This document shows, piece by piece, positions 5,481-30,200 of a stretch of DNA of 64,000 bases. A program made the position numbers and the translations under genes. The stretch is from Octopus sinensis (Eukaryota). Positions within the stretch are counted from its first letter, which is position 1, and the number at the start of each line of letters is the position of its first letter. The DNA lies in contig NC_043006.1 of assembly GCF_006345805.1 (NCBI RefSeq), forward strand, positions 79,546,001 to 79,610,000, written 5' to 3'. The notes under the pieces are model-generated. The model worked only from the letters and a program-made list of their open reading frames with translations, searched no databases and had not been told where the DNA came from.

Positions 5481-8400
5481 GTATATAATAAAGATACAGA
5501 ATAGGAAAATATATCTGTATAGCTCCACAATCTGTGTGACGTTATATTTTTCCTGTAATGCCAGAAGAGGAAGACAGCCTAAGAGGGGACCTGATCTGAA
5601 TGCTGTTGCAACATAGTCAACTCCACTAAAGACATTCAAGAGTGGGGGGGAGTAGGTGGTATAAAACCAGATAAAGAGATTAAGTCAACCACCGAGGAAC
5701 AGGAATTCTTCCTTCAGGTCTTTCACATATTTTGCCCTCTACCCAACTTTACTCACAAAACCTTGGTCTAACCAAGACTATTATAGGAGACATTTGTCTA
5801 AGGTGCCCTTGCAATGAGATTGAATTAAAATTTCTGACTCACATGGCCATGCCTTACTTTATTATGCACCCAAGTCTTTAGACTGCTGCCATCCTGGAGC
5901 ACTGCTTTGAAGGGATTTAGGCAACCAAAATAACCCCGATACTTATTCTAGTGATTTCTATTTTTTATACTGCTAAGTTATGGGGCATAAACACAGACAC
6001 TGTTGTCTTCGTGTGGTGCCAAATATAAAGACAGGCACATACAAACACACACACATACATACAGTGGGCTTCCACACACTTTCTGCCAACCAATTTCACT
6101 CAATGAATTGGTCGGTCTGAGACGATTAAAAGACACCTACACATGATGCCAAGCAACAGGACTGAACCTAAGACCACATGGTTGCAAAATGAATTCAATA
6201 ACTCCACACGTTTCAAGTCTATCCAATTCCTCGCTGACTTATTTCAACGCTGTGAAAGGTACAGTTTGTTTGGGTTTCAATACCAGTATAACACTTTTTT
6301 TTTTTTTTTACTTGAAACTTCGCCTTTGTTTTTTTGGCACAGACCTAATTCATCAGACAAAACTTCAGGAAAAATCTTTTTTAATTCTTCTGATGACTTA
6401 TTTGTACTGGTGGAAAACAATTCACATTTTCACAAAAAAGATTTATGGAGTGGTTCCATAAGTTAAATAATTCCATCCAGTCTGTTACAAAAAAATATCG
6501 TTGTATTATTCAACACAAAAACTTTGGCTTATAAGGTTTTTCCATAAAATGTAACATCACTTATTATTTCACCCTTAAAATGTAATTTTTTTCCTGAAAC
6601 ACTGCATGCAATTTTCAAAGTTTCTTTTAATCTAGGTCTCCTGATTTTTTCCATGAATCTGTGTTAATTAATGAGACACCACTGCCTGTATCCAACTATA
6701 ACTTTATGATTGTATTATTAACTATTTACATACACAAATTTCCTTTGAAACCAGTTCATATTTCTTCTCCCCGATAACCTGTTTACATGATTTTTTCTGT
6801 TGAGCCATTTTTTAGGTTTTGTTTTACAGTATGATTTATCGACCCCGAAAGGATGAAAGGCAAAGTCGACCTCAGCGGAATTTGAACTCAGAACGTAACA
6901 GCAGACAAAATACCACTAAGCATTTCGCCCAGCAAGCGAACATTTCTGCCAGCTCGCCACCTTTTTTTATGAGCTATCTTACCACACTTGAAGCATTTTA
7001 TATTTTTAAACGGACAGTTACTTTTAAAATGTAGACCACTGCAGTCATAACATGGATTCTGTCTTGACATTTTTTCTAATCCATTACTGGTTGACAGGCA
7101 TGAATGTGAGAGCAATCTTTTGCTTCAGTTTTATCTGCTTTATGTCTTAGATTTATAATCCTCTAACATTCTTCTGCTACTGCATGTAGAGCTAATTTTT
7201 GGTCCTGTTCTAATTTTGTTAATATCCAGGAATGTATATCTGCAGCTTTGCTTGCAGTTAGCCCTTGAACAAAATTAGACATCTGAACATGTCTAGGGTC
7301 AATTTGAATTTTTCACACTCTCTGTTAGCAACCCCAGGATAGGTGACAAAATCTTTAACATCTTTTTTGACCAAATTTAAACACTGCCAGTAAGTATTGA
7401 ACAGGGAACTTCTTTGACTGAAAATTTTTGATAAAAAATTGTTTCGTTGAAATAAATCTCACTTGATTTCTTCAGCAGAATATAGTTACTATATTCTTCA
7501 TGTTCAGCAGGGGATAGCTTTCTTAAAAGTAGTTGTACTTCTATCTCATCAGACCAATTTTTACATTCTTCTTCAACGATTTCTTCATATCTTCAAAAAT
7601 ATGCAGAGATGGTAATCCCTTCTGGATTATAACTGAATTCTTCAATTGAGTTTCCTACGCTGTCTGGCAAGTATGAACCTGAAGTATTTTCAGACTTCTT
7701 CAGCATTAATTCCAGCAACTGTTGGTTTTGTTGTAGTTGCTGCAACTGCACCACAGAGGCCAATAAGTCCTCCACGTTAAGCAATTTTTTCTTTGTTTTC
7801 ATACCCCCCAAATTTTTGACATCCAACGCAAGCTTCGAACATCTCATTGCCACTTTTATGTCCTGGTGTTGGATAAATAATTTAACGAAGCTGGGGGAAA
7901 GTATTCACACAATGCAATACGCTTACTATCACACGAGACTCAACACTCTCTATCAACAGCTCACAGTGAATTGCTCACAATCAACTCGACAGTTCTTTAT
8001 TTTATTAAAATGTGCCAGTCCACTTTTAGTAACATGGGGATGGTCAGAATCCTGCTACAACACATTTAAATTGGCCATATTTGGCCTAAATATTCTACCT
8101 GCTTTATGTTCAGATCAGCCAGATTTAGCCTTTCATGTCTACCCCTACAGTGTTATTCCAAAAATTCAACAATTTCTAAGCTACAAGGTAAGGTATGATT
8201 AATTTTAAAACAATGTGAATAAATAAGCATTACATTTGATAGTGTAATCTGAATGCTAATGGGTTAAAAGTCTCCAGTTCTCACAGGGACTATTGTTTAC
8301 AAAAACATGCAAAAATGGTACAGTAAATAGAGAAGTAAATCAATCAGTTACTCTGATTCAAAAGCATGTATCAAACTGCAGTCTGAGTTATTTTTATTTT

Positions 8401-11223
8401 TAATTGAAGATGTGTTGTACACCAAAAGACAGAAAGTAGAAATAAAAAAAAATAATAAAAAAGATATACTGCAAGAAAAACGAACCTTTCCTAAAGATGC
8501 CAGGTGGTCCGGAACAACAGCACGCTCGGGTTCGTACATAATGGCCTTTAATAAATTGGGACAGATATAGTTCCACATATCAGCTACGTAGTGGTCTCCC
8601 TTGATTCTGGCACACTCTAAGAGGTAAGGCAAAGATTCAGCAGCAGATACTCTGACATCTATGCATGTTGTCAAGGAAATCATTACATACAATGAAATGC
8701 AAAGCACAATGTAAAGTTATTGAACATGAAACCCATTGAGAAATAAGTGAACTAGAATGCTCAATATGTTCAATACAGAAACAGTTTGATATTAGATAAA
8801 GATTTCAAAAAGGCTTTTTTAAATATGCTTTTACATAGTCAGTTGTTACTTTCTATGTTCAATCATGGTATTAAATAAAATACTAAGACAGAGTTCGTGT
8901 GTGTGTGTGTTTGGATAAACTGTGAATGAGCTCACATGCATACATTTGATGAACTTGACTTTCAGCCTCAATATGTAGATATAACTCATAGTCAGCCACT
9001 AATTCTGATACAAAAATCTTATTCTAAAGTGATTTAATTAAAACCTTTAAAATTCCATCTTATCTTTTACTTGTTTTAATCAGACTGTGACCATGCTTCT
9101 TCTTTTAGTTGAATGAAGCAACCCCTGTACTTATTCCATCATCTCTTAATGAACCGCTCAGTTACAAGGATATAAACATACTCTTTACTCTCTTTACTTG
9201 TTTCAGGCATTTGAGTGTGGCCATGCTGGAGCACCGCCTTTAGTTGAGTAAATTGACCCCAGGGCTTATACTTTGTAAACCTAGTACTTAATCTATTGGT
9301 CTCTTTTGCCAAACCGCAAAGTTATGGGGACATAAACACACCAACATCAGTTGTCAAGCGATGTTGGGGGGACAAACACACACACACATATATATATATA
9401 CACAACAGGATTCTTTCAGTTTCGGTCTACCAAATCTACTCACAAGGCTTTGGTCGGCTTGAGGCTATAGTAGAAGACACTTGCCCAAGGTGCTTGCCCA
9501 TGTGGTTCGTAAGCAAGCTACTTACACACAGCCGCTCCTATGACTTTAAGTTTCTAACATCAGTTTAATAATGACAAAGTTATTGCAATTAATTATTCAT
9601 TATTTTTAAAATTGAAACTAAGGCCACACAAAAAGCACCCAGTACACTGTAAAGTGATTGGCATTAGAAAAGGTACCCAACTGTAGAAATCATGCCAAAT
9701 CAGGCAATCTGAGCCTGGAGCAGCTCTCTAGCTTGCCACCTCCTTGTCAAACTGCCAAACTAAGCCAGCATGGAAATAAGATGTTAACTGATGATGGAAG
9801 GCACTGTATTGCAACAGATACAGTGACAAAAAAAGGTTAAACTATAAGACTCTTTCTATAGCACAAAGCTGAGAAGAGCTCAACTAGTTTTGAGTGGTTA
9901 TTGCCATCTTATAAATCTTAATAAAGATTGTCTACTTGTGATAGATAGTCCTAGAGGTAGTGGAAGCAGTTTAGCAATTTTTGTAAGTAGCTCAAAGCTG
10001 CTTTCTTTCGAATGTCCATGAAAAAACAATCAACAAATCAAAAACAGGACAACTATATTTTTAATAAGTACTATACATTTTGGAAGGGTTTACTAAAATA
10101 TCTGTAGTTTTAGGAGAGTATTGTAGTTCACTTGAAGCAGTGTATATTGTTTGTAAAATATAATGTATCTTGAATGGCACAACAATGCACTATAATGGCT
10201 GTTATAATTTAATCATCCAGTCTGATATAAATATTTCAGAATACTATATCATCATCATCATTTAACAACTTTTCCATGTTTGCATGAGTCAGTTTATAGC
10301 AGCAAATTTTCTACAGCTGGATATCCTTCCCGTATCCAAGCAAGGTAATACTTCCCCCATGACCAGGCATACTTTTACAGAATACAGGAAATGAATGACA
10401 TACAGTTACTGTGATGTCAAGACAATAACATACACACACACAATGGGGTCTTTTAGTTTCTATCTTCCGAATGTACTCACAAGGCTTTGATCAGCCTGTG
10501 GTTATTGGCAAAGACACTTGTTATAGTGTGACTGAACCTGAAACTATGTGGCTGGCAAGCAAATTTCTCAGCCATACAACCATGCCTGCATCCCGAGCTG
10601 CAGCTTTATATCTTTGTTTTTATCTTTTACTTGTTTCAATCATTTGACTGGTGGGGCACCACCTTGAAGTGCTTTAGTCAAGCAAACCAAACCCTGGACT
10701 TATTTTTTTAAGCATGGTATTTATTCTAACAATCTCTTTTGCTGAACCAGAAAGTTATGGCAATGTAAAGACACCAACATCAGTTGTCAAGAGAGACACA
10801 CACACACACATTTTATCGAATATACCTAACACACACATATATATATATATATATATATTAGAAAAAATGAGGTAATCAGATCAGATGGTTCATATTTGTA
10901 GATATTTATATATTACATTTTTTACATATATATCATATCATATCATTCGGATTAGCGCTTGCTCCCATTCTAGTGGGCTTTTCAAATCAAATCAGTTGTG
11001 GGGAGTTTGAACATTTTATAGTTTCGTAGTTTCAAACTCCCCACAACTGATTTGATTTGAAAAGCCCACTAGAATGGGAGCAAGCGCTAATCCGAATGAT
11101 ATGATATGATATATATGTAAAAAATGTAATATATAAATAAATATCTACAAATATGAACCATCTGATCTGATTACCTCATTTTTTCTAATATATAATACCT
11201 GTACATCATCTCCAAACCTTCCG

Positions 11224-11272
<49 letters not shown>

Positions 11273-14200
11273 ATGTATTTGCCATCTCAATATGGCTAAC
11301 CACTAAGGGTGGGTGTTACTGTAGCTTGTAGCCCCAGGAGAACATCTCCTCCAGCTGGCTTTAGGCATATTGGTTAGCCATATTGAGATGGCAAATATAC
11401 CTCACATTGTCGTGCAGTTACTGTTTATACCTCGCTCAGAGATTTATTATATATATATATATATATATATATCAGGCTTCTTTCAGCTTCTATCAAACCT
11501 ATTCACAAGGCTTTGGTCAGCCCAAGGCTATAGTAGAAGACACCCAAGTGCCATGCAGTGGGACTGAACTCGAAAACATGTGGTTGGGATGCAAGCTTCT
11601 TACACAGCTACACCTGTGCCTATATTGGTATATATTTTTTATGGAAGACAAAAGGACAGTGCTTGTGAGCTTTTTACAGAGGTTCTAAGACTGGCAGAAG
11701 TTACCCCCAGAAACTGAACTGGAGATCATTAGATCACTTGTCCAGCAACTGAACTACAAAGCTACGCTTTAAATTAAACTTCCATAGTCAAAGTAAACCA
11801 GTAGAATTTACCAGATTCGTGATGGGTGTCAAAGGGTGTAAGGTTCTTTTATGAACCAAGTAGATTATTCCAAGTTGGATCCTTGTTGTGATCATATTTT
11901 TATCAAACCAAAACAACCACACTACCTATATCTTCCAATTATTTAAAAGCATCATGAATATTGAGAGATTTAGTGAAATAATTCTGTTGTTATTAAGTAG
12001 ATGTTTGGAAAAAAAATTTCAACGAAAGGCCCTTGCCTAAAATTATGACAAAAGGATTTTTTACATAAATATGAACAAACACTTTAAAATGAGAGGATTT
12101 TCATCAGAACTATACCTAGTCTCAGGCAAGTTAATTTTGAAAGGGATAATTGCTTCACTTATATCGCAAATATTTATCAGAAAAGACAAACTTTGCTTTC
12201 TGTCTTTTCTTTCCTACCTCTACAAAGGCATGGCTTACAGCCAATTCCAGATCTTCCCTTCTACTCCAGTTTACAGTGCACACTTCTAATTATAAAGATT
12301 AGCCTCCATATTTAAAGTACAAACTTCCCTGTTTGTTCCACAGTTCAAAACAAACTGTACTATGATCAATACAAAGTGAACAGACAGACAGTATGTCATT
12401 GCTTTAATAATAAATAAAGTTGCATTCACTTGATATTAATTATGCAAAACAAACTTCTAAAAATGTACCACAAAGATACATAAATATATAACTATACAAA
12501 AGGAAACAACTCTTTTAAGGGTTTCTATTATATGAGAAATAATGTAATCTAACATCACAGAGCACTTTTAAATTTATTATTGACAAAAAAAAAAAACTAC
12601 TTATAAAGATGATAACATAGAGCTTTTTGTAGGCAGTGCTCTGATGCAAAGTGCCAGAAAAGGTTAAAAGAGGGGACTGAAGCAGCTGCAAGTCAAACGG
12701 AAAAGTTACAGTAAAAGAGCCATAAAGAGGAAAAGGTACTTGATCACATCAATAGAAGGTACACCGTTACCATTTGATAAAAGTGTTCCTTTCACTATTG
12801 TAAATGTACAGTCATGTTTAACACAGTTTCTAGACATCTTCATCCCAACAACAAACTTATCTACAGGGCCCTTGAATGCAAAATTACTGCAATAAAATAG
12901 TAATAAAGTTTCTAGAGAACCAAGCGCCAGATCTGTTTCTTTCTTGATTTTAGATTCTCGGTTCAATAAAAATACGAGTGAGGAGTCTAGTGCAGGTCTT
13001 GTACGAGCATGTATATTTTAAATAAAATGAGACAACAAAACCAAGGCTATGTGGAATTTATAGGACATTAAAGAGAAAGGTAGTCTTACAGCTGTTTCTG
13101 GGATTTTAGGGATATCCCTTCATCAGAGACTATTTCCCTCTAGTTAACTCTCTCATATTGTCTCTGATGAAGGGATATCCCTATTGTCCCAGAAACAGCT
13201 GTAAGACTACCTTTCTCTTTAGAAATGTCCCATAAATTCCATACAGCCTTGGTTTTATTGTCTCATTTTATTTAACATATACTTGTGAAGACCTGTTGAG
13301 GCAAGTGAAAATCAAACCAAATCAATATGGATGAACATCAATGGAATTTGCATCTTTGTGGTACCAGTGCCGGTGGCACATAAGAAAACCATCCGAACGT
13401 GGCCGTAGCCAGTACCGCATCGACTGGCCTCCGTGCTGTGGGCACGTAACAAACACCATCCGACCGTGGCCATTTGCCAGCCTCGTCTGGCACCTGTGTC
13501 GGTGGCACATAAAAAACACCATCCGAGCGTGGCCGTCTGCCAGCCTCGTCTGGCATCTGTGTCGGTGGCACATAAAAAACACCATCCGAGCGTGGCCGTC
13601 TGCCAGCCTCGTCTGGCATCTGTGTCGGTGGCACATAAAAAACACCATCCGAGCGTGGCCGTTCGCCAGCCTCGTCTGGCACCTGTGTCGGTGGCACATA
13701 AAATCAGCCACTACACTCTCAGAGTGGTTGGCGTTAGGAAGGGCATCCAGCTGTAGAAACACTGCCAGATCTGACTGGCCTGGTGCAGTCTTCAGGCTCA
13801 CTAGACCCCAGTTGAACCGTCCAACCCATGCTAGCATGGAAAGTGGACGTTAAACGATGATGATGATGATGATGATATATAAATATATATATTAAAATCT
13901 TTTAATCATTATCTTCGTTTGTATGTCAGCTCTTTCCATGAGTCTCTGAGACACATCGTGAAACAATATCCCTAGTGCTAAGATGCCCTTCTTTATGTGA
14001 GCCCTTATTTTTCAAGTAAAACATTTTATTCCAATACTATTTGCATATCAAACTGTGGGGCAAAAGCAAACATCACTGTTGCCCAAGCAGTATAAATTCA
14101 AAGACACAGGGAGAAAAACACACATATACACATATATCTTCCAAATTTCACTTTCAAGGCATTGCTCAACCAGAGGCTATACTAAAACACACACATGCTC

Positions 14201-15986
14201 AACATTCCAAGCAATGGGATCAAGCCTGGTACTATGTAGTTGTGAAATAAAATTCTTAACTGCACAACCTAAATAATTGCCTGAATAATGATAAGATCTT
14301 ATAAATTTGTTGGCCTGAATGTAGAATAATGATGAATTAGACAGATGAACTTTGGAAAGGATACCATCGTGGAAAACAAACTTTAGCAGTGGTACGATTA
14401 GTTTGACTACTTCTTCTGTGTATTCAGCAAAACCCTCCTTCAGTTCACGAGCATAACAGACAATCATTTGGCAGGCTGTAGCTTTCTCCTCAAGACCAGA
14501 AGTACGTACACCTATACTTTGCTGCAATAACAAAAGGAAAAAAAAAATTTTAAATACATAAAAATATAACATTGGTGAAGGATCAGTGGTTAGAGCATTC
14601 GATTCCTGGATAATGCTATGTGTTGTGTTTTTGAGCAAGACACTTTATTTCACATTGCTCCAGTTCACTCAGCTGAAGAAATGAGTTGTGACATCACTAG
14701 AGCCAAGCTGTATCGGTCTTTGCCTTTCCCTTGGTTAACATCAGTGGCATGGAGAGGCTGGTATGCATTGGTGACTGCTGGTCTTCCATAAACAACCTTG
14801 CCTATACTTATAACTAGAAGGATAACTTTTTAGGTGCAATCCCATGGTCAGTCATGACCAAAGGGGGTCTTTTTTACCTTGAATATATTTACTCACATCT
14901 ATTGATATGTATATCTGTGCATAAATCATCATCAAATCCACTTTTCCATGTTGGCATGAGTCAGATAAAGTTTACTGGGACAGATTTTCTATGGTTGGAT
15001 GCCCATCACATTGCCATCCCTCACTTGTCTCCAAACAAGGTAATATTTCCCCATGGCCAGGTATGGTTTTGGAGAATACTGGAAACGAATGACACTGGTT
15101 GTATGACAGTAGCACTCATTTATAACTATTACTTGATGTCAAAACAAGGAGACACGTACACTCAGACATACACAGTGGGCTTCTTTCAGTTTCTGTCTAA
15201 CAAATCTACTCACAAGACTTTGTCAACCCAGGGTTTTAGAGGGAAGACATTTGCATGAAGTACCATACAACAAGACTGAACTCATGACCATGTGGTTCGG
15301 AATGTACAACAGAAATTCCAGGATAAAGAGAAAATGGGAGATGATGCCTTTCAAATTCAGCAGAATAAATGATAGTGCCTGTACAGGGTCATTCACACTG
15401 CTAGAAATACCAACCAAATCTTTCTCCGATTGCACATTAGCATTCTTTAAAATAAAAGAATAATGTATTGGATAATTTAATTTCAGATAAAACTTTGTCT
15501 AAAACAACTGGATGATCAAGACTTGCTTTTCGCCATATGTATGCTTAGGTAAGGATTGAACTGGAGGCTAAGTGATGACAATGGTGTAAATGAAAAACCA
15601 GTCTGGGGCCCATAAAAGAGTTAATCAGAAACAAGGTAAAAGCAAAGCCTTGCTATACATTAATAAGAAAAGATGAAAGAATGGAGCACCAACCAGAGAA
15701 CATTCTTTGTGTTTAAAGTTAAAGCTCCTTGCATTAACCATCAAAGTTTCAATTTGAAGCTCATACACACATCAGCACACACACTTTTAACTTATATTTG
15801 TTTCAGTCATTAGATGGTGGCCATGCTAGGGTACCGCCTTGAAGAATTTCAGTCGAATGAATCAATCACAGCATTTTTTTTTGTTTTTGAAAGTCTATTT
15901 TGCTGAACTGCTAAGTTACAGAGATGTACACACACCAACACCACTTATGAAAAAACACACACAATTATATATATATATATATATAT

Positions 15987-16017
<31 letters not shown>

Positions 16018-17515
16018 ATGGGCTCCTTTCTGTTTCTGTCTACCAAATCCATGCACAAGGCTTTGGTTGGCCCAAGGCTATATATGACACTTGCTCAAGG
16101 TGCCATGTAGTGAAACTGAACCTGCAGCCATGTGGTTGGGAAGCAAACTTCTTACCACACAGCCCAAAGTTATGAAGATTTATTCAAAAGATTACATTTA
16201 AACAGAATGAAGATAATTGTCACTTTTCATTAACAAAACAATAAAGAAATAAAACAATGATTGATGACTTACTTGGTCGCCTAAAGTAACAAATTGCCAA
16301 TCTGTGTCATCTTCCATTTCTTTCATATCATCACCTGAACAGAAATTAAAGGGGTTAAAATAACTACATAAGCAAGAACACACACACAAATATAGAGAGT
16401 AAGGAAGAGAGATTGGAAGGAAGATTGAGGGAGATCAATACAGTAATGACACTTGAAAACTCATACAGAAAAGAAAACAACTAGCAACATGCTAGCTTGT
16501 TTCTTCTTCTTCTTACAGCATTCACCTGGGGTGGGTTGAGCTGGCTTCATTCATCCTCAATGCTGCATCTCTCACAAACACCGACCAAGCCTGGTGATTT
16601 GAGACTAACGACCGTGTGATCTCCAACCACTCCTTATTCCAGCGGCGAACGCCGTAGATATGGGGGCCTGGGTTGGGTTCCAGATCAGCCTTGACCGTCA
16701 TCGGCCAGGTTTTTCGTTGTCCACCACGACGCTTTCGCCAACCCTGAAGGAGAGCTGGGGCAATTGCCTCGTAGATGAATTCTCCTGGTTGACGATGGAG
16801 GGCATGACCCAGCCAACACAGACGCCCCATTAGGATGACTTGTCGGAGGGAGGTGATTCTGCACTGGTGTCGCACCGAATTGTTGGAGACAAAGTGATGC
16901 CATCGGATACGAAAGATGCTTGTTTAACTTATGTTGTATATCATTGCTTTTCCTTTTTTTCCACAACTGGAAAATGCCTTTTTTATTAAAAAAATTATTA
17001 TTCTAAAATGACATCATACCAAATGTTTCCTGGATATTCAGCAATCAACAAATAATTATTCATTCTGCTTTATCTCTATTTCTTATCTACTGATTTTATT
17101 TATGACTCTTTCACTGTAAACAATCCAAGTATTAAAACATTTATGGGACTTTACCATCCATCATATTGCAAGTACAGCATTGTACAATTGTCAAGCACTG
17201 ATTCGTATAGCAAAATTGGCTACAATACATAGCATACAGTTTACTGGGCAACATAGTATACAATCTGCAGGGTATTGCTTTATAGTAAAGAATGGTGCAG
17301 GGCATGACTGCATGGCCAGAAGTTTGCTACCCAAACACATGGTTTCAAGTTCAAGCCCACTGCATAACACTTTGGATAAGTGCCTTCTACTACAGCTCTG
17401 GGTCAGCCAAAGCCTTGTGAACAGACTTGAGAGGCTGAAAGAAACCGGTCATATCATCATCATCATCATCATCATCGTTTAGCGTCCGTTTTCCATGCTA
17501 GCATGGGTTGGACGG

Positions 17516-22494: not shown

Positions 22495-23607
22495 CATACG
22501 CATATATATATACATATATATACACACACACACACATATACATATATCATCATCATCGTTTAATGTCTGCTTTCCATGCTGGCATGGGTTGGACAGTTTG
22601 ACTGAGGACTGGCGAGCCAGATGGCTGCACCAGGCTCCAATCTGATCTGGTAGAGTTTCTACAGCTGGATGCCCTTCCTAACGCCAACCGCTCCGAGGGT
22701 GTAGTGGGTGCTTTTATGTGCCACCGGCACGAGGGCCAGCCAGGTGGTACTGGCAACAGCCGTGCTCGAATGGTGATTTCTATATGCCACCTGCACAGGA
22801 ACCAGTCCAGCGGCACTGGTAACAACCTCGCTCGAATGTTGTTTTTCACGTGCCACCGGTTAGAAGTGCCAGTAAGGCGTATATATATATATATATACTT
22901 TATATAATTAGGGTTCAGCAAAAAAATTTACTTTACCACACACTGAACTTTTAGAAATAGCAGCCAAAGAATTTAGCTATTTCTTCTACTATAAGTTTTT
23001 GAGTATACATTGTCTGGGAGACCCTTGGCTGCTATTTCTAAAAGTTCGGTGTATGGTAAAGTAAATTTTTTTGCTGAACCCTAATTATATAAAGTAATGT
23101 TTTAAATATACCATAAAAGGTCTTTTTACATACTGAACACTGCTTGGTAAAATTATTAATTACTAATTAATTAATTTTACGCTTACTGTTACTGACTATA
23201 TATATATATATATCTTTATATATCTTTTATCTATACTTGCTTCAGTCATTGGGATCCAACCATGCTGGAGCACCACATTGAAGGATTTCTAGGTGAATGA
23301 ACAAACCCCCATTTCTTTATAGTTAAGAAACCCTGGTGCTTATTCTGTCAGTCTCTTTTGGCGAACCACTAAGTTACAGGAACATACACATACCAATGCC
23401 AGTTGTCAAGCAGTGGTGGGACGGACACACACACACCCACACAATATATATTCTTTTGTTCGTTTACTAGTCTCAGTCATTTGAATGCAGCCATGCTGGA
23501 GCACTGCCTTAGGGGATTTTAGTTGAACAAATAGACCCCAGGATTATATATATATATCATCATCATCATCATCATCATCGTCGTTTAACGCACTAGCACG
23601 GGATATA

Positions 23608-27246: not shown

Positions 27247-30200
27247 TGTATGTCTGTGTTTTTCCCCCATCCACCATCACTTGACAACTAATGTTGGTGT
27301 GTTTACATCCTCGTAACTTAGCAGTTTGACAAAAGTGATCGATAGTATAAGTACTAAGCTTACAAAGAATAAGTCCTGGGATCGATTTATTCGACTAAAG
27401 GCAGTGCTCCAGCATGGCTGTAGTCAAATGACTAAAACAAGTAAAAGAGAAAGCCTAAAGATAACTTCCCTACTAACTAAAATAGCATATAATAGCCTCA
27501 TGGTGATGCTGATCCTTTCTACTAAAGGCACAAGGCCTAAAATTTGGAGATAAAAGGCTAGTTAATCACATCAACCCCAGAGCTCAACTGGCACTTCTAT
27601 CAACCCTAAGATAATGAAAGTAGAGGCACATGGCCTCGTGGTTAGGGCAGCGGACTCACGGTTGAGGGATCGCGGGTTCAAATCTCAGACCGGGCGATGT
27701 GTGTGTTTATGAGTGAAACACCTAAGCTCCATGCAGCTCCGGCAGAAGGTAATGGCAAAACTTCTGCTGATTCTTTCACCATAACTTTCCCTCACTCTTT
27801 CCTCCTGCATCTTGCAGCTCACTTGCGATGGACCAGCGTCCCGTCCAGGTGGGGAACTTATACGCCAAGAAACCGGGAAACTGGCCCTTATGAGCCAGGC
27901 ATGGCTCGAGAAGGAACAAAAGAGAATGGAAAGTAATGTCAATCTCAGCAGAATTTGAAACCAGAACACAGTGAAGAAGACATAACAGAAAGCATTTTTT
28001 TCAACGCTCTAACAGTTCTGTCAGCTTACCACAACAACAACGATGATACCACTGCCCTGTTTTGGCAGCTAAACCTCAAGCATTCAACAAAGAGTATAAT
28101 TTCAGAAGTCAACTAATGAATATTTTCCTGGTTAAGCAAATACCACAATAGTCAGTAAATGAATCGGAACAGACTGGCCAAGTACTCATGTATTGACCTA
28201 AATAGTGAAGTGGGTGCTTAACATACTTAATCTAGTAAGCTAAGGAATTTTAATTTTAAATAAGCTGATGAAAACAAACAGTATAGAAATAACTAATTCT
28301 GGTCAAAAAATATAAGGGAGACAACCCTGAAAGTCTGATTAACTAAAAATTAATTAAATATGGAATGAAGCAAAGAGCATTACAGTGCCAACTCCTAAAT
28401 TCTTGACTAGTCAAGATTTTGGTCCCTGGTTATAAAAATTTCATTTTACATCCAATACAAATTATTTATCATTTGTAGGTTTAAGAGCTTAAATAAAACC
28501 TTGCTGATGAATCTTTTACAGACTTGTTTATAATGACTAGTTTATTATATAAAATAACAATTAATAAAGGAATTGTGTTATTTTTCATTTTCTTTTTTAG
28601 TGTTAAATATTTCTGTATCTGAAGGAGGAGTTAAAACACTTGTTTTAAAAGACAACCACTGAAAGACAAAGTAAAAATGATATTCATGTTTCTATGTAAA
28701 ATGCTATGAAGATAAATATGCGCTGCCTTGATTCCTAGTGGAGTATGCTTGAAACTCATAAAGCGTTGTACTAGTAGTCTTAGGTTGTAAATAACTCAAC
28801 CGTTTATGAACAAGAGTTAACACTTTTGTTGTTATACGAGGTGGTATCAAAAGGTTACCAGACTAGTTATATTTAACAAAAAGTAACTTATTTTAACATC
28901 ATCTCCTTCGAAATAAAATGGTAACGTTTGAGCTGGATTTTCATCTTCAGGAAGAGATGGAAGTCCGCAGGTGCTAAAATCTGGCAAACAAGGTGGATAC
29001 AGAAGCAATACCATGTTGTTTTTGGCAAGTGAGGAGAGCTTGTGATAAGGTGCATTGTCCTGAAGAATGCAATTCTTTGCGCTCCAGAAATCCAGTTACT
29101 TTCGCTGAACGTTCTCCTTCAAACGTTGCAGTAGAACTCTCGATTGATGGCCTGGCTCTAGGGGATGAATTCTTGATGCACAATACCACATTTCCAAGGA
29201 GATTCTTCTGCTTTTGAAATGACCATGCCAATCAAAACACTGGGTACAACTGACTGCCTCGTAGAACCAAGGATAGGTGAACAAAATCAAAATCCATAAC
29301 ATTGGGAAGCTGTAGGCACACAGCCAGAGAGGCAAACTCCATCCTCTATCTCTTCTAATCATCAGCCAAGTTTCTCACCACCTTCCTCCCTGTCTATTTC
29401 TTGATGTTGCACATTAGTTCCTTTGTGGTATTTCTACCCTTTTACTGAGGTTTTCTCCATGCAAGCTAATAGTCACAAGGGGTGGGATGTCTTTGTGTCA
29501 CATTAGAAGACCAACCACTTCATTTTCTACCTTTGAACAATGGCCAGAAAAGCTCTGTTGTTCACAAGCTCCTTCATCATTCATTCATTGTTTAACATCT
29601 GTCTGCTATGCATGCATGGGTAGGATGGTTGACAGGAGCCAGCCAGGCTACTGTGTCTACTTTGGCAGGGTTCTTACGGCTGGATGTCTTTCTTAATACC
29701 AACCACTCAGCGAAGTGGACTAAAACAGATTTGCTATCATACTTATTAATTTGGTGTTCATCGTCACCAGTTTGATGGCCACTTTACTATGCTGGCATAG
29801 ATCAGATGGAATTTACTCACGGAGGAAGATTTTCTACAGCTGGATATCAATTCTACCACCAATCCTCACTGGCTTCCAAGCAAGTTAATCATTTCCCTCA
29901 TGGCTGGACATGTTTTCACTGAAGACTTGGAGTGAGGCACTGCTTGCACAACAGTCATGTTCGCTTATAACTGTCATGTGATGTCAAGACAAGGAGACAC
30001 ATTATATCTATCTATATATATATATAAAACAAACTGATAAAAATCAATAAATAAATCATAATAACCAACTGCCAGCCTGCTACAGCTGAATACTGATGAG
30101 CATATTGAGACATACAGTAAAATGAAGAGATAATTTCCTTTGAGAGATAAACAGGGACAGCAGAAGAAGTAGAAGAGGGAAGCGTCGTTACCTTATCATG

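What the first reader, a model, noticed from the sequence alone, without database searches (positions are those of the whole stretch)
13081..13132. Intact-core hammerhead ribozyme motif in the IPO5 pre-mRNA, inside a U12 intron
Seen: the transcribed (minus) strand reads UAGUCU-CUGAUGA-AGGGAUAUCCCUAAAAUCCCA-GAAA-CAGCUG-UA-AGACUA, giving a perfect 6-bp stem I, complete CUGAUGA and GAAA, a 2-bp stem III inside the palindrome ACAGCUGU and a GUA cut site (between plus 13087 and 13086). Known: minimal type I hammerheads with palindromic stem III occur in Penelope-like elements and retrozymes and cleave best as dimers. Inference: this RNA could cut an essential nuclear-import gene's pre-mRNA within a slowly spliced minor intron. 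Caveat: the base of stem II is A opposite A, not the usual R-Y pair.
Basis: partly seen in the sequence, partly recalled or inferred. Interest (0 to 1): 0.85.

Follow-up and report, generated by a model that had tools for sequence, protein, structure and literature searches.

The report
Retrotransposon hammerhead copy in octopus intron
The hammerhead-ribozyme motif is real, but it is one of about 1,400 copies carried by a Penelope-like retrotransposon family in the octopus genome, and in this importin-5 intron it is locked inside a long hairpin, so it most likely does nothing to the gene.

Summary
The motif is at 13081-13132(-) exactly as described, and chance does not explain it: a generic descriptor finds 2 hits in the window against 0.01 in shuffles. 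The gene is IPO5 and the host intron (14364->8659, minus) has U12-type signals. The motif is not specific to this gene. It is the sense hammerhead of a 5'-truncated copy of a ~540-bp non-coding retroelement of Octopus sinensis. An exact core pattern occurs 1,406 times genome-wide, with 0 in the control. A second, inverted 5'-truncated copy adjoins it with a 5-nt overlap, and carries its own hammerhead on the + strand (13160-13207). The family shows variable 5' truncation, head-to-head inverted partners, microsatellite tails, a 7-bp helix II, a 4-bp helix I and a palindromic ACAGCUGU helix III. These are the published hallmarks of Penelope-like-element (PLE) "min-HHRs". Autonomous PLEs of this genome carry a U3-A8 variant of the same design in their 3' ends. 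In the IPO5 transcript the two arms form a ~290-nt hairpin (-188 kcal/mol). Forcing the hammerhead fold costs +66 kcal/mol, and no second sense copy is present for the dimer these ribozymes need. Verdict: a new member of a known kind. Regulation of IPO5 is unsupported.

The parts
13081..13132 (-). Sense hammerhead motif (the finding). Stem I 13132-13127 / 13086-13081. CUGAUGA 13126-13120. Extra A 13119. Stem II 13118-13112 / 13106-13100, with an A.A mismatch at 13113/13105. Loop II 13111-13107. Extra A 13099. GAAA 13098-13095. Palindrome CAGCUG 13094-13089. U16.1 13088. A17 13087. Predicted cut between 13087 and 13086.
12950..13133 (-). Forward (gene-sense) copy of the non-autonomous retroelement, consensus positions 202-388, 92.5% identical. 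It is 5'-truncated exactly at the hammerhead and lacks the last ~70 nt of the consensus.
   Evidence: BLAST against the family consensus
13129..13297 (+). Inverted, 5'-truncated partner copy, consensus 174-330 (94.9% identical), with weaker similarity on to ~13297. It overlaps the other copy by 5 nt at the junction (13129-13133).
13160..13207 (+). Second hammerhead motif on the + strand: GUCU-CUGAUGA-A-GGGAUAUCCCUAUUGUCCC-A-GAAA-CAGCUG-UA|AGAC. The core is intact and stem II has 6 of 7 pairs. It appears in antisense in the IPO5 transcript.
12993..13297 (.). Near-perfect inverted repeat: arms of ~140 nt, 90-94% complementary, with about 23 nt unpaired at the tip. In RNA it forms a ~290-nt hairpin that contains both hammerhead sequences.
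   Evidence: (dG -187.6, z -24.9)
8659..14364 (-). Host intron of IPO5, 5,706 nt, with U12-type GT-AG signals: |GTATCCTTTCC at 14364 and TTCCTTGAC, 12 nt, AG| at 8659. The flanking exons join in frame as ...[15 protein letters not shown]...

Best explanation
The motif is the hammerhead of a dispersed, non-coding, ~540-bp retroelement family of Octopus sinensis. The family has the insertion architecture and the ribozyme design of Penelope-like elements (PLEs), so it is most likely a non-autonomous PLE derivative. The IPO5 intron took one insertion of the usual PLE kind: a 5'-truncated forward copy joined head-to-head to an inverted 5'-truncated copy, which puts one hammerhead on each strand. 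Shown: membership of the repeat family, the architecture, the copy number, extra conservation of the core in this sub-family, and the presence of a like-designed hammerhead in the 3' ends of the genome's autonomous PLEs. Inferred from the literature: in the element's own tandem or multimeric transcripts, two hammerheads pair through the ACAGCUGU palindrome into a double hammerhead and cut the RNA to unit length. In the IPO5 pre-mRNA this cannot happen. The antisense arm is transcribed first and zips up the sense hammerhead into a ~140-bp duplex, and there is no second sense copy. The motif is therefore a silent passenger. If the insertion has any effect on IPO5, that effect would come from the long intronic double-stranded RNA, not from ribozyme cleavage.
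For: Repeat family: the arm has at least 1,645 first-look candidates, and the scored copies are 83-94% identical. The 3' segment has at least 1,453. The exact pattern CTGATGA-N18-24-GAAACAGCTGTA gives 736 + 670 hits against 0 in the control, and stem II alone marks 1,369 places. Retroelement architecture: copies have variable 5' truncation points (consensus 1, 9, 76, 83, 124, 152, 161, 173, 206, 229, 286, 297, 313-322) but a fixed 3' end followed by (TA)n. Inverted partners end at consensus ~330, followed by (CA)n. All 7 opposite-strand neighbour pairs among 100 motifs are '- then +'. There are no terminal inverted repeats. Craig et al. (PMC8557442) describe exactly these traits for PLEs. Ribozyme design: helix II of 7 bp, helix I of 4 bp, an unpaired nucleotide between A9 and G10.1, G10.1-C11.1, and palindromic 15.2-16.2 with loop 3, as in PMC4209133, which also reports dual motifs on opposite strands 100-700 bp apart. 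PLE link in this genome: 15 of 30 RT+GIY-YIG loci carry UUGAUAA-GGUUC..GAACC-GAAA-CAUG-U on the ORF strand, 420-1,170 nt after the stop. In 14 of those 15 it lies 41-122 nt before a (TA)n tail, and there are 0 antisense hits. Constraint: in 30 copies chosen without regard to the hammerhead, the core has 13 mismatches against 37.4 expected from base-specific flank rates (P = 2e-6), and GAAA has 0 in 120 sites. Stem II is identical across at least 5 sub-families whose loop II differs at most positions. A relative that is 74% identical keeps the motif with a compensatory G-C to A-U change. Dimer design: the monomer hammerhead fold is -8.8 kcal/mol (below the monomer MFE of -12.3), while the double hammerhead is -33.5 (dimer MFE -35.1). 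Silencing in IPO5.
Against: No autonomous PLE sharing sequence with this family was found; the 30 sampled PLE loci have no similarity to it. The PLE assignment therefore rests on architecture and ribozyme design, not on a demonstrated partner. The motif has an extra nucleotide between C11.1 and G12 that the published min-HHR description does not include. Rfam's hammerhead models do not score it. Within-family covariation is negligible: 87.7% of cells paired against 87.4% in shuffles. One sub-family appears to descend from a master with U4->C: the 5' box reads CCGATGA 17, CTGATGA 20, CCAATGA 9, a CpG-decay pattern. Catalysis may therefore not be required for spread, and the conserved feature could be an RNA shape rather than cleavage. 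No cleavage or expression data exist for this family. Thermodynamic sequestration does not rule out rare kinetic folding, or unwinding by helicases or editing in vivo.
Confidence: 0.85

Rival explanations
1. Gene-regulatory ribozyme: the sense hammerhead cleaves IPO5 pre-mRNA inside the slowly spliced U12 intron and lowers importin-5 output.
For: The core is intact and stems I-III can be drawn. The motif is on the transcribed strand of a U12-type intron. Conserved intronic hammerheads are known in amniotes (cited in PMC7229834).
Against: It is one of ~1,400 repeat copies. It is sequestered in a hairpin: forcing the hammerhead fold costs +66 kcal/mol, pair probabilities stay below 1e-17, and the nascent RNA is already zipped by the time the hammerhead is complete. 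The monomer hammerhead fold is not even the MFE of the isolated 52-mer (-7.5 against -11.0). No dimer partner lies in the 64 kb. PLE min-HHRs showed no detectable monomer cleavage in vitro. A non-Watson-Crick pair sits next to the core.
Confidence: 0.03
2. The conserved motif serves the retroelement, but not as a ribozyme. The stem II hairpin and its surroundings would be a structure recognised by the reverse transcriptase or needed for template handling, and the hammerhead core would be a relic.
For: A sub-family with a probable U4->C master still amplified to hundreds of copies. Stem II is invariant across sub-families whereas the positions flanking it drift. Published in-vitro activity of PLE min-HHRs is very low. 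Craig et al. note that PLE clades without hammerheads proliferate well and that hammerheads may 'simply parasitize PLEs'.
Against: In sub-family A the 13 catalytic positions are the most conserved part of the element, with GAAA at 0 changes in 120 sites. The autonomous PLEs keep a C3-G8 to U3-A8 covariant core, which preserves a pair that matters only for the catalytic fold (PMC4209133). The palindromic helix III makes sense mainly for a double hammerhead.
Confidence: 0.12
3. The locus is a foldback or MITE-type DNA transposon, or a hairpin (micro)RNA gene, and the hammerhead resemblance is incidental.
For: There is a near-perfect ~290-nt hairpin. Rfam gives weak matches to long-hairpin plant miRNA families (55.8 bits against a gathering score of 211).
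Against: The two arms have different outer ends and variable inner junctions. Solo copies are common. The 5' and 3' ends of full-length copies are not inverted repeats. The miRNA matches lie far below threshold and on both strands, which is generic for any long hairpin. The hammerhead core is specifically conserved.
Confidence: 0.03
4. A chance match to a short degenerate consensus.
For: The core is only 11-13 specified bases, and Rfam does not call it.
Against: The descriptor gives 2 hits against 0.01 expected. There are 1,406 genomic copies against 0 in the control. Conservation is specific to the core.
Confidence: 0.005

Closest known systems
Minimal hammerheads (min-HHR) of Penelope-like elements (Cervera & de la Pena 2014, PMC4209133; also Lunse, Weinberg & Breaker 2017, not readable here)
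   Same: Type I topology. Long helix II (7 bp) and short helix I (4 bp). An extra nucleotide between A9 and G10.1. G10.1-C11.1. A 2-bp helix III inside a palindrome (ACAGCUGU) suited to a double hammerhead. Thousands of dispersed, mostly solo copies, plus pairs on opposite strands 100-700 bp apart. Position near the 3' end of a retroelement that ends in a microsatellite.
   Different: An additional unpaired nucleotide on the 3' side of helix II (between C11.1 and G12), which gives a 1x1 internal loop (A.A, A.G or U.U). The carrier is a ~540-bp non-coding element, not a pseudo-LTR flanking an RT-EN ORF. No sequence-matched autonomous PLE was identified. No activity data exist.
Animal non-LTR retrozymes (Cervera & de la Pena 2020, PMC7229834; Li, Clavereau & Pollet 2026 preprint, 10.64898/2026.07.22.740005)
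   Same: A non-autonomous, AT-rich, few-hundred-bp retroelement carrying a type I hammerhead and thought to derive from PLE pseudo-LTRs. In some lineages the hammerheads need dimers for good cleavage.
   Different: Retrozymes are defined by head-to-tail tandem repeats that yield circular RNAs. This family is mostly solo or head-to-head inverted: only 2 same-strand neighbour pairs (295 and 948 bp apart) among 100 motifs. Its hammerhead is the minimal type, without loop-loop contacts. The preprint reports exclusion of retrozymes from introns, whereas this copy sits in one.
Conserved intronic hammerheads of amniotes (HH9 / HH10; De la Pena & Garcia-Robles 2010, cited in PMC7229834)
   Same: A hammerhead on the sense strand of an intron of a protein-coding gene.
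   Different: Those are single-copy, ultraconserved at orthologous positions, have canonical stems with tertiary contacts and are detected by Rfam models. This one is a repeat copy with a minimal design, is not detected by Rfam, and is buried in a hairpin.
Schistosoma Sm-alpha / Sj-alpha SINE-like elements and newt satellite 2 hammerheads
   Same: High-copy short retroposon-like or satellite repeats with type I hammerheads whose weak helix III favours dimers.
   Different: Those carry canonical cores with a 4-bp helix II and 6-bp helix I plus loop contacts, and they occur largely in tandem. There is no sequence relationship.

Membership tests
Hammerhead ribozyme (catalytic core) | Conserved core C3 U4 G5 A6 N7 G8 A9 ... 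G12 A13 A14, A15.1-U16.1, H17 (not G) | tested here: met
   CUGAUGA, GAAA, U, A are all present in order on both copies; the generic descriptor hits both.
Hammerhead ribozyme (catalytic core) | Mg2+-dependent self-cleavage 3' of H17 | not testable with these tools
   No biochemical or RNA-end data are available. Published relatives are inactive as monomers.
Hammerhead ribozyme (Rfam Hammerhead_1 / 3 / II / HH9 / HH10 models) | Score at or above the family gathering threshold | tested here: not met
   no hammerhead family is listed, even at E <= 10, over 12800-13450.
PLE-type minimal hammerhead (min-HHR) | [quoted passage not shown] | tested here: met
   A13119 in the window. A (or U) in 88 of 89 genomic instances.
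PLE-type minimal hammerhead (min-HHR) | G10.1-C11.1 closing a long helix II (6-8 bp), directly followed by G12 | tested here: inconclusive
   G-C closes a 7-bp helix II, but one extra nucleotide separates C11.1 from G12 in all sub-families. Alternatively, 10.1-11.1 is itself A.A, A.G, U.U or A-U.
PLE-type minimal hammerhead (min-HHR) | Short helix I (4-5 bp) and palindromic 15.2-16.2 / loop 3 allowing a double hammerhead | tested here: met
   Family helix I is GUCU/AGAC. ACAGCUGU is a perfect palindrome. Double hammerhead -33.5 against -8.8 kcal/mol for the monomer.
PLE-type minimal hammerhead (min-HHR) | Resides in the terminal repeat / 3' region of a Penelope-like element | tested here: inconclusive
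   The carrier shows PLE-style insertion architecture. Autonomous PLEs of this genome carry a like-designed U3-A8 hammerhead near their 3' ends. No sequence-matched RT-EN element was found.
Penelope-like element (insertion architecture) | Variable 5' truncation, adjacent inverted 5'-truncated copy, microsatellite target or tail | tested here: met
   compared with PMC8557442.
Penelope-like element (autonomous) | ORF with telomerase-like RT and GIY-YIG endonuclease | tested here: not met
   The ~540-bp unit has no ORF. Homology ends ~60-100 bp upstream of my consensus start. It can only be a non-autonomous derivative.
Non-LTR retrozyme | [quoted passage not shown] | tested here: not met
   Only 2 same-strand neighbour pairs among 100 motifs, against 7 inverted pairs and about 80 solo motifs. 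Expression is not testable here.
U12-type (minor) intron (host intron) | 5' site /RTATCCTTT and branch site TCCTTRAY 10-15 nt from the 3' site | tested here: met
   /GTATCCTTT, and TTCCTTGAC with its A 12 nt before AG.

The most novel reading that the evidence does not exclude
The head-to-head hammerhead pair is not inert. Octopus neurons edit double-stranded RNA heavily, so ADAR editing or helicase unwinding might loosen the ~140-bp intronic duplex. The sense hammerhead could then pair in trans with the many other transcripts carrying the same palindrome and cut IPO5 pre-mRNA at a low, tissue-dependent rate during the slow U12 splicing step. More generally, about 1,400 such motifs might form a genome-wide layer of ribozyme- or dsRNA-mediated damping of intron-containing transcripts.
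Probability: 0.03. Interest if true: 0.65.

Novelty: new member of a known kind. Interest (0 to 1): 0.2.

Why it matters
For IPO5 it probably does not matter. The result removes an attractive but unsupported idea, a ribozyme switch in an essential import gene. For mobile-element and ribozyme biology it adds a documented cephalopod family of PLE-type minimal hammerheads: ~1,400 motif copies, several sub-families, and a symmetric 1x1 internal loop between the core and helix II. It also adds a U3-A8 core variant in the 3' ends of apparently young autonomous octopus PLEs. The contrast between one sub-family with a strongly conserved core and another that seems to have spread with a U4->C core bears on an open question: whether PLE hammerheads are needed for retrotransposition or merely ride along. 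For genome scans, an intact hammerhead core in an animal intron should first be tested for repeat membership and for an inverted partner.

Tried and rejected
1. Rfam at gathering and at E <= 10 gave no hammerhead family. It gave only sub-threshold long-hairpin miRNA matches on both strands, rejected as generic hairpin artefacts.
2. Pfam on short exon translations was uninformative. It was replaced by a PDB sequence search, which identified importin-5.
3. BLAST of the element consensus against 30 RT+GIY-YIG loci found no similarity. My first strict descriptor found no hammerhead in them. A relaxed scan allowing the U3-A8 covariant found the PLE hammerhead.
I did not pursue this by other means.
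The genome-wide comparison of core against flank 7-mers is therefore incomplete: only anchor 1,369, +CTGATGA 667 and +GAAACAG 1,004. The low CTGATGA fraction is explained by sub-family B.
6. Within-family covariation is uninformative, as expected for young repeat copies.
7. The MITE / foldback reading was rejected: no terminal inverted repeats and variable junctions.
8. Lunse et al. 2017 (PMC5785218) and the supplements of PMC4209133 are not held. I therefore could not check whether a 3' extra nucleotide at helix II, or any mollusc example, is already published.
9. A possible shared 'CACTCGTAT' word between the PLE 3' tail and the element's 3' module is too short to count as homology, and I make no claim from it.
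Full report
OBSERVATION. The GUA site places the predicted cut between 13087 and 13086. A generic minimal-hammerhead descriptor, written without reference to this hit, finds two matches in the 64-kb window. These are this motif and a twin on the + strand (core 13164-13203). The mean in 200 dinucleotide-preserving shuffles is 0.01, and no shuffle gives two. The motif is therefore real and not a chance match. Rfam lists no hammerhead family here, at gathering thresholds or at E <= 10.

GENE CONTEXT. Minus-strand exon translations, joined, match human importin-5 (PDB 6xte) at E = 8e-140. The intron holding the motif runs from 14364 to 8659 on the minus strand. It starts G|GUAUCCUUUCC, and it has UUCCUUGAC with its branch A 12 nt before the AG. 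These are U12-type signals, and the exons join in frame. The genome has 2,719,151,902 bases in 13,516 scaffolds, and the window's scaffold is 105.89 Mb long. These figures match the statistics published for Octopus sinensis GCA_006345805.1 (PMC10700109).

The motif is one arm of an inverted repeat with arms of ~140 nt (about 12993-13133 and 13157-13297), 90-94% complementary. As RNA the region folds into a ~290-nt hairpin of -187.6 kcal/mol, z = -24.9. The other arm carries its own intact hammerhead on the + strand.

A REPEAT FAMILY. The arm is a high-copy dispersed repeat, with at least 1,645 first-look candidates; the scored copies are 83-94% identical. A 3' segment of the same element has at least 1,453. 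The exact pattern CTGATGA-N18-24-GAAACAGCTGTA occurs 736 + 670 times in the genome, against 0 for the reversed control. Alignment of 60 fetched loci gives a non-coding unit of roughly 540 bp. Copies start at many different positions but share one 3' end, followed by (TA)n. About half have an inverted, 5'-truncated partner placed head-to-head. That partner ends at consensus ~330, followed by (CA)n. Among the first 100 motifs on chromosome 1, all seven opposite-strand neighbour pairs are '- then +', and only two pairs share a strand. The ends of full-length copies are not inverted repeats of each other. This is the pattern of a reverse-transcribed element, not of a MITE. It matches the published description of Penelope-like element (PLE) insertions: strong 5' truncation, an adjacent inverted 5'-truncated copy, and insertion bias for (TA)n and (CA)n microsatellites (PMC8557442). 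In the window, the minus (gene-sense) copy covers consensus 202-388 and the plus copy covers consensus 174-330. They overlap by 5 nt at 13129-13133.

RIBOZYME DESIGN. The family consensus is GUCU CUGAUGA A GGGAUAU CCCUA AUAUCCC A GAAA CAGCUG U A AGAC. It has a 7-bp helix II, a 4-bp helix I, a nucleotide between A9 and G10.1, a G10.1-C11.1 pair, and a 2-bp helix III inside the 8-nt palindrome ACAGCUGU. Cervera and de la Pena (PMC4209133) give these traits for the 'min-HHR' of metazoan PLEs. They also report dual motifs on opposite strands 100-700 bp apart. The one departure is an extra nucleotide between C11.1 and G12. It is a family trait that drifts between sub-families: A.A 58, A.G 14, U.U 8 and A-U 7 among 89 instances. 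In 56 of 60 family copies the fifth pair is a C.U mismatch. The A that repairs it here lies in the 5-nt junction overlap with the inverted partner. Energetically the design favours a dimer. The monomer hammerhead fold of the consensus is -8.8 kcal/mol, below the monomer MFE of -12.3. The domain-swapped double hammerhead is -33.5, close to the dimer MFE of -35.1.

LINK TO PENELOPE-LIKE ELEMENTS IN THIS GENOME. The GIY-YIG family (PF01541) has 4,846 first-look candidates and 149 scored matches over the cut-off, some inside open frames of 780-883 aa that also contain a reverse transcriptase. In 15 of the 30 fetched loci the ORF strand carries UUGAUAA GGUUC...GAACC GAAA CAUG U, and it never appears in antisense. 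This motif lies 420-1,170 nt after the stop codon. In 14 of the 15 loci it lies 41-122 nt before a (TA)n tail. It is a min-HHR with the U3-A8 core covariation that PMC4209133 described for Schistosoma PLEs, and it has the same GAAAC-palindrome-GU layout. The autonomous PLEs sampled share no sequence with the 540-bp family. The family's own partner therefore remains unidentified, and its PLE origin is inferred from architecture and design.

IS THE HAMMERHEAD UNDER CONSTRAINT? In 30 copies chosen through their 3' segment only, the 13 core positions show 13 mismatches in 390 sites (3.3%), against 8.5-10% in the flanks. Only 1 of 205 non-core 13-nt windows is as conserved. With base-specific flank rates the expectation is 37.4 mismatches (P = 2e-6), and GAAA has no change in 120 sites. 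Across at least five sub-families the stem II sequence is identical, while loop II differs at most positions. A relative only 74% identical keeps the motif with a compensatory G-C to A-U change. Two cautions apply. Covariation within the family is negligible, as expected for young copies. In the sub-family with loop AUAAA (273 exact copies), the 5' box in the copies that could be displayed reads CTGATGA 20, CCGATGA 17 and CCAATGA 9. That is a CpG-decay pattern and points to a master with C at the essential U4. A lineage with a crippled core seems to have spread all the same. Whether cleavage itself is required for propagation therefore stays open, an uncertainty Craig et al. also voice.

CAN THIS COPY CUT IPO5 PRE-mRNA? 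Very unlikely, for four reasons.
1. In a 321-nt transcript context the MFE is -196.7 kcal/mol. With the hammerhead fold enforced it is -130.6, a penalty of 66 kcal/mol. No hammerhead base pair exceeds a probability of ~1e-17.
2. The antisense arm is transcribed first, so the sense hammerhead is already zipped up when it is completed.
3. PLE min-HHRs showed no detectable cleavage as single motifs and only weak cleavage as dimers or trimers in vitro (review PMC6765202).
4. The 64-kb window contains no other copy of the element.
What the insertion does provide is a long intronic duplex. Any effect of that duplex on editing, small RNAs or splicing is speculation here.

COMPARISON AND NOVELTY. The closest known class is the PLE minimal hammerhead. 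It works like one, and it meets the tested defining features, except for the extra 3' nucleotide at helix II and a demonstrated residence in a PLE terminal repeat. It is not a retrozyme in the strict sense, because copies are not tandem. It is unlike the single-copy, ultraconserved intronic hammerheads of amniotes. I found no paper describing hammerheads in octopus repeats: the only paper joining the two topics mentions Octopus for Naiad PLEs, which lack canonical hammerheads. Cervera and de la Pena already reported that such motifs are massive and widespread in metazoan genomes. I rate it a new member of a known kind, of low interest as a finding about IPO5 and of modest interest for PLE and ribozyme biology.

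LIMITS. Lunse et al. 2017 and the supplements of PMC4209133 were not available. No expression or cleavage data could be consulted.

Noticed in passing
window 13359-13731: A 63-bp tandem array of about 6 units lies directly beside the inverted pair. A related array lies next to the family copy in L006 and at window ~22680-22900. It is probably the internal array of another SINE-like octopus repeat.
   Followed up: no
window 8659-14364 (-): The IPO5 intron between ...KFVFHD and DVRVSAAES... has textbook U12-type signals: /GTATCCTTTCC, and TTCCTTGAC 12 nt before AG.
   Followed up: yes
L061-L090 (e.g. L067:1165-3264 -, L068): Many Penelope-like elements have open RT+GIY-YIG frames of 780-883 aa, and dozens of loci score identically, which points to a young family. 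Their 3' UTRs carry a U3-A8 covariant minimal hammerhead 41-122 nt before a (TA)n tail. Some copies have a 30-45-nt extension before the microsatellite, like the published PLE 'tail'.
   Followed up: partly
genome-wide; L026:2325-2390 (-): One sub-family of the hammerhead element (loop AUAAA, 273 exact copies) appears to descend from a master with CCGAUGA (U4->C). The 5' box counts are CTGATGA 20, CCGATGA 17 and CCAATGA 9 in a displayable subset. The divergent L026 copy has the same change.
   Followed up: partly
G000:C1:9312133-9312467: Two identical hammerhead motifs lie on the same strand 295 bp apart. This may be a head-to-tail tandem (retrozyme-like) arrangement of the family.
   Followed up: no
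window 16522-16923 (-), 6888-7904 (-), 28847-29374 (-): Other mobile-element debris lies in IPO5 introns, judged from ORF translations only: a LINE-like RT C-terminal fragment, gag-like ORFs with a CCHC knuckle, and a mariner/Tc1-like transposase fragment.
   Followed up: no
L031-L060, consensus 313-322: Five of 30 copies begin at consensus 313-322, exactly where inverted partners end (TTTAAC). The last ~137 nt of the element may therefore be a separate module fused to the hammerhead-bearing part.
   Followed up: no
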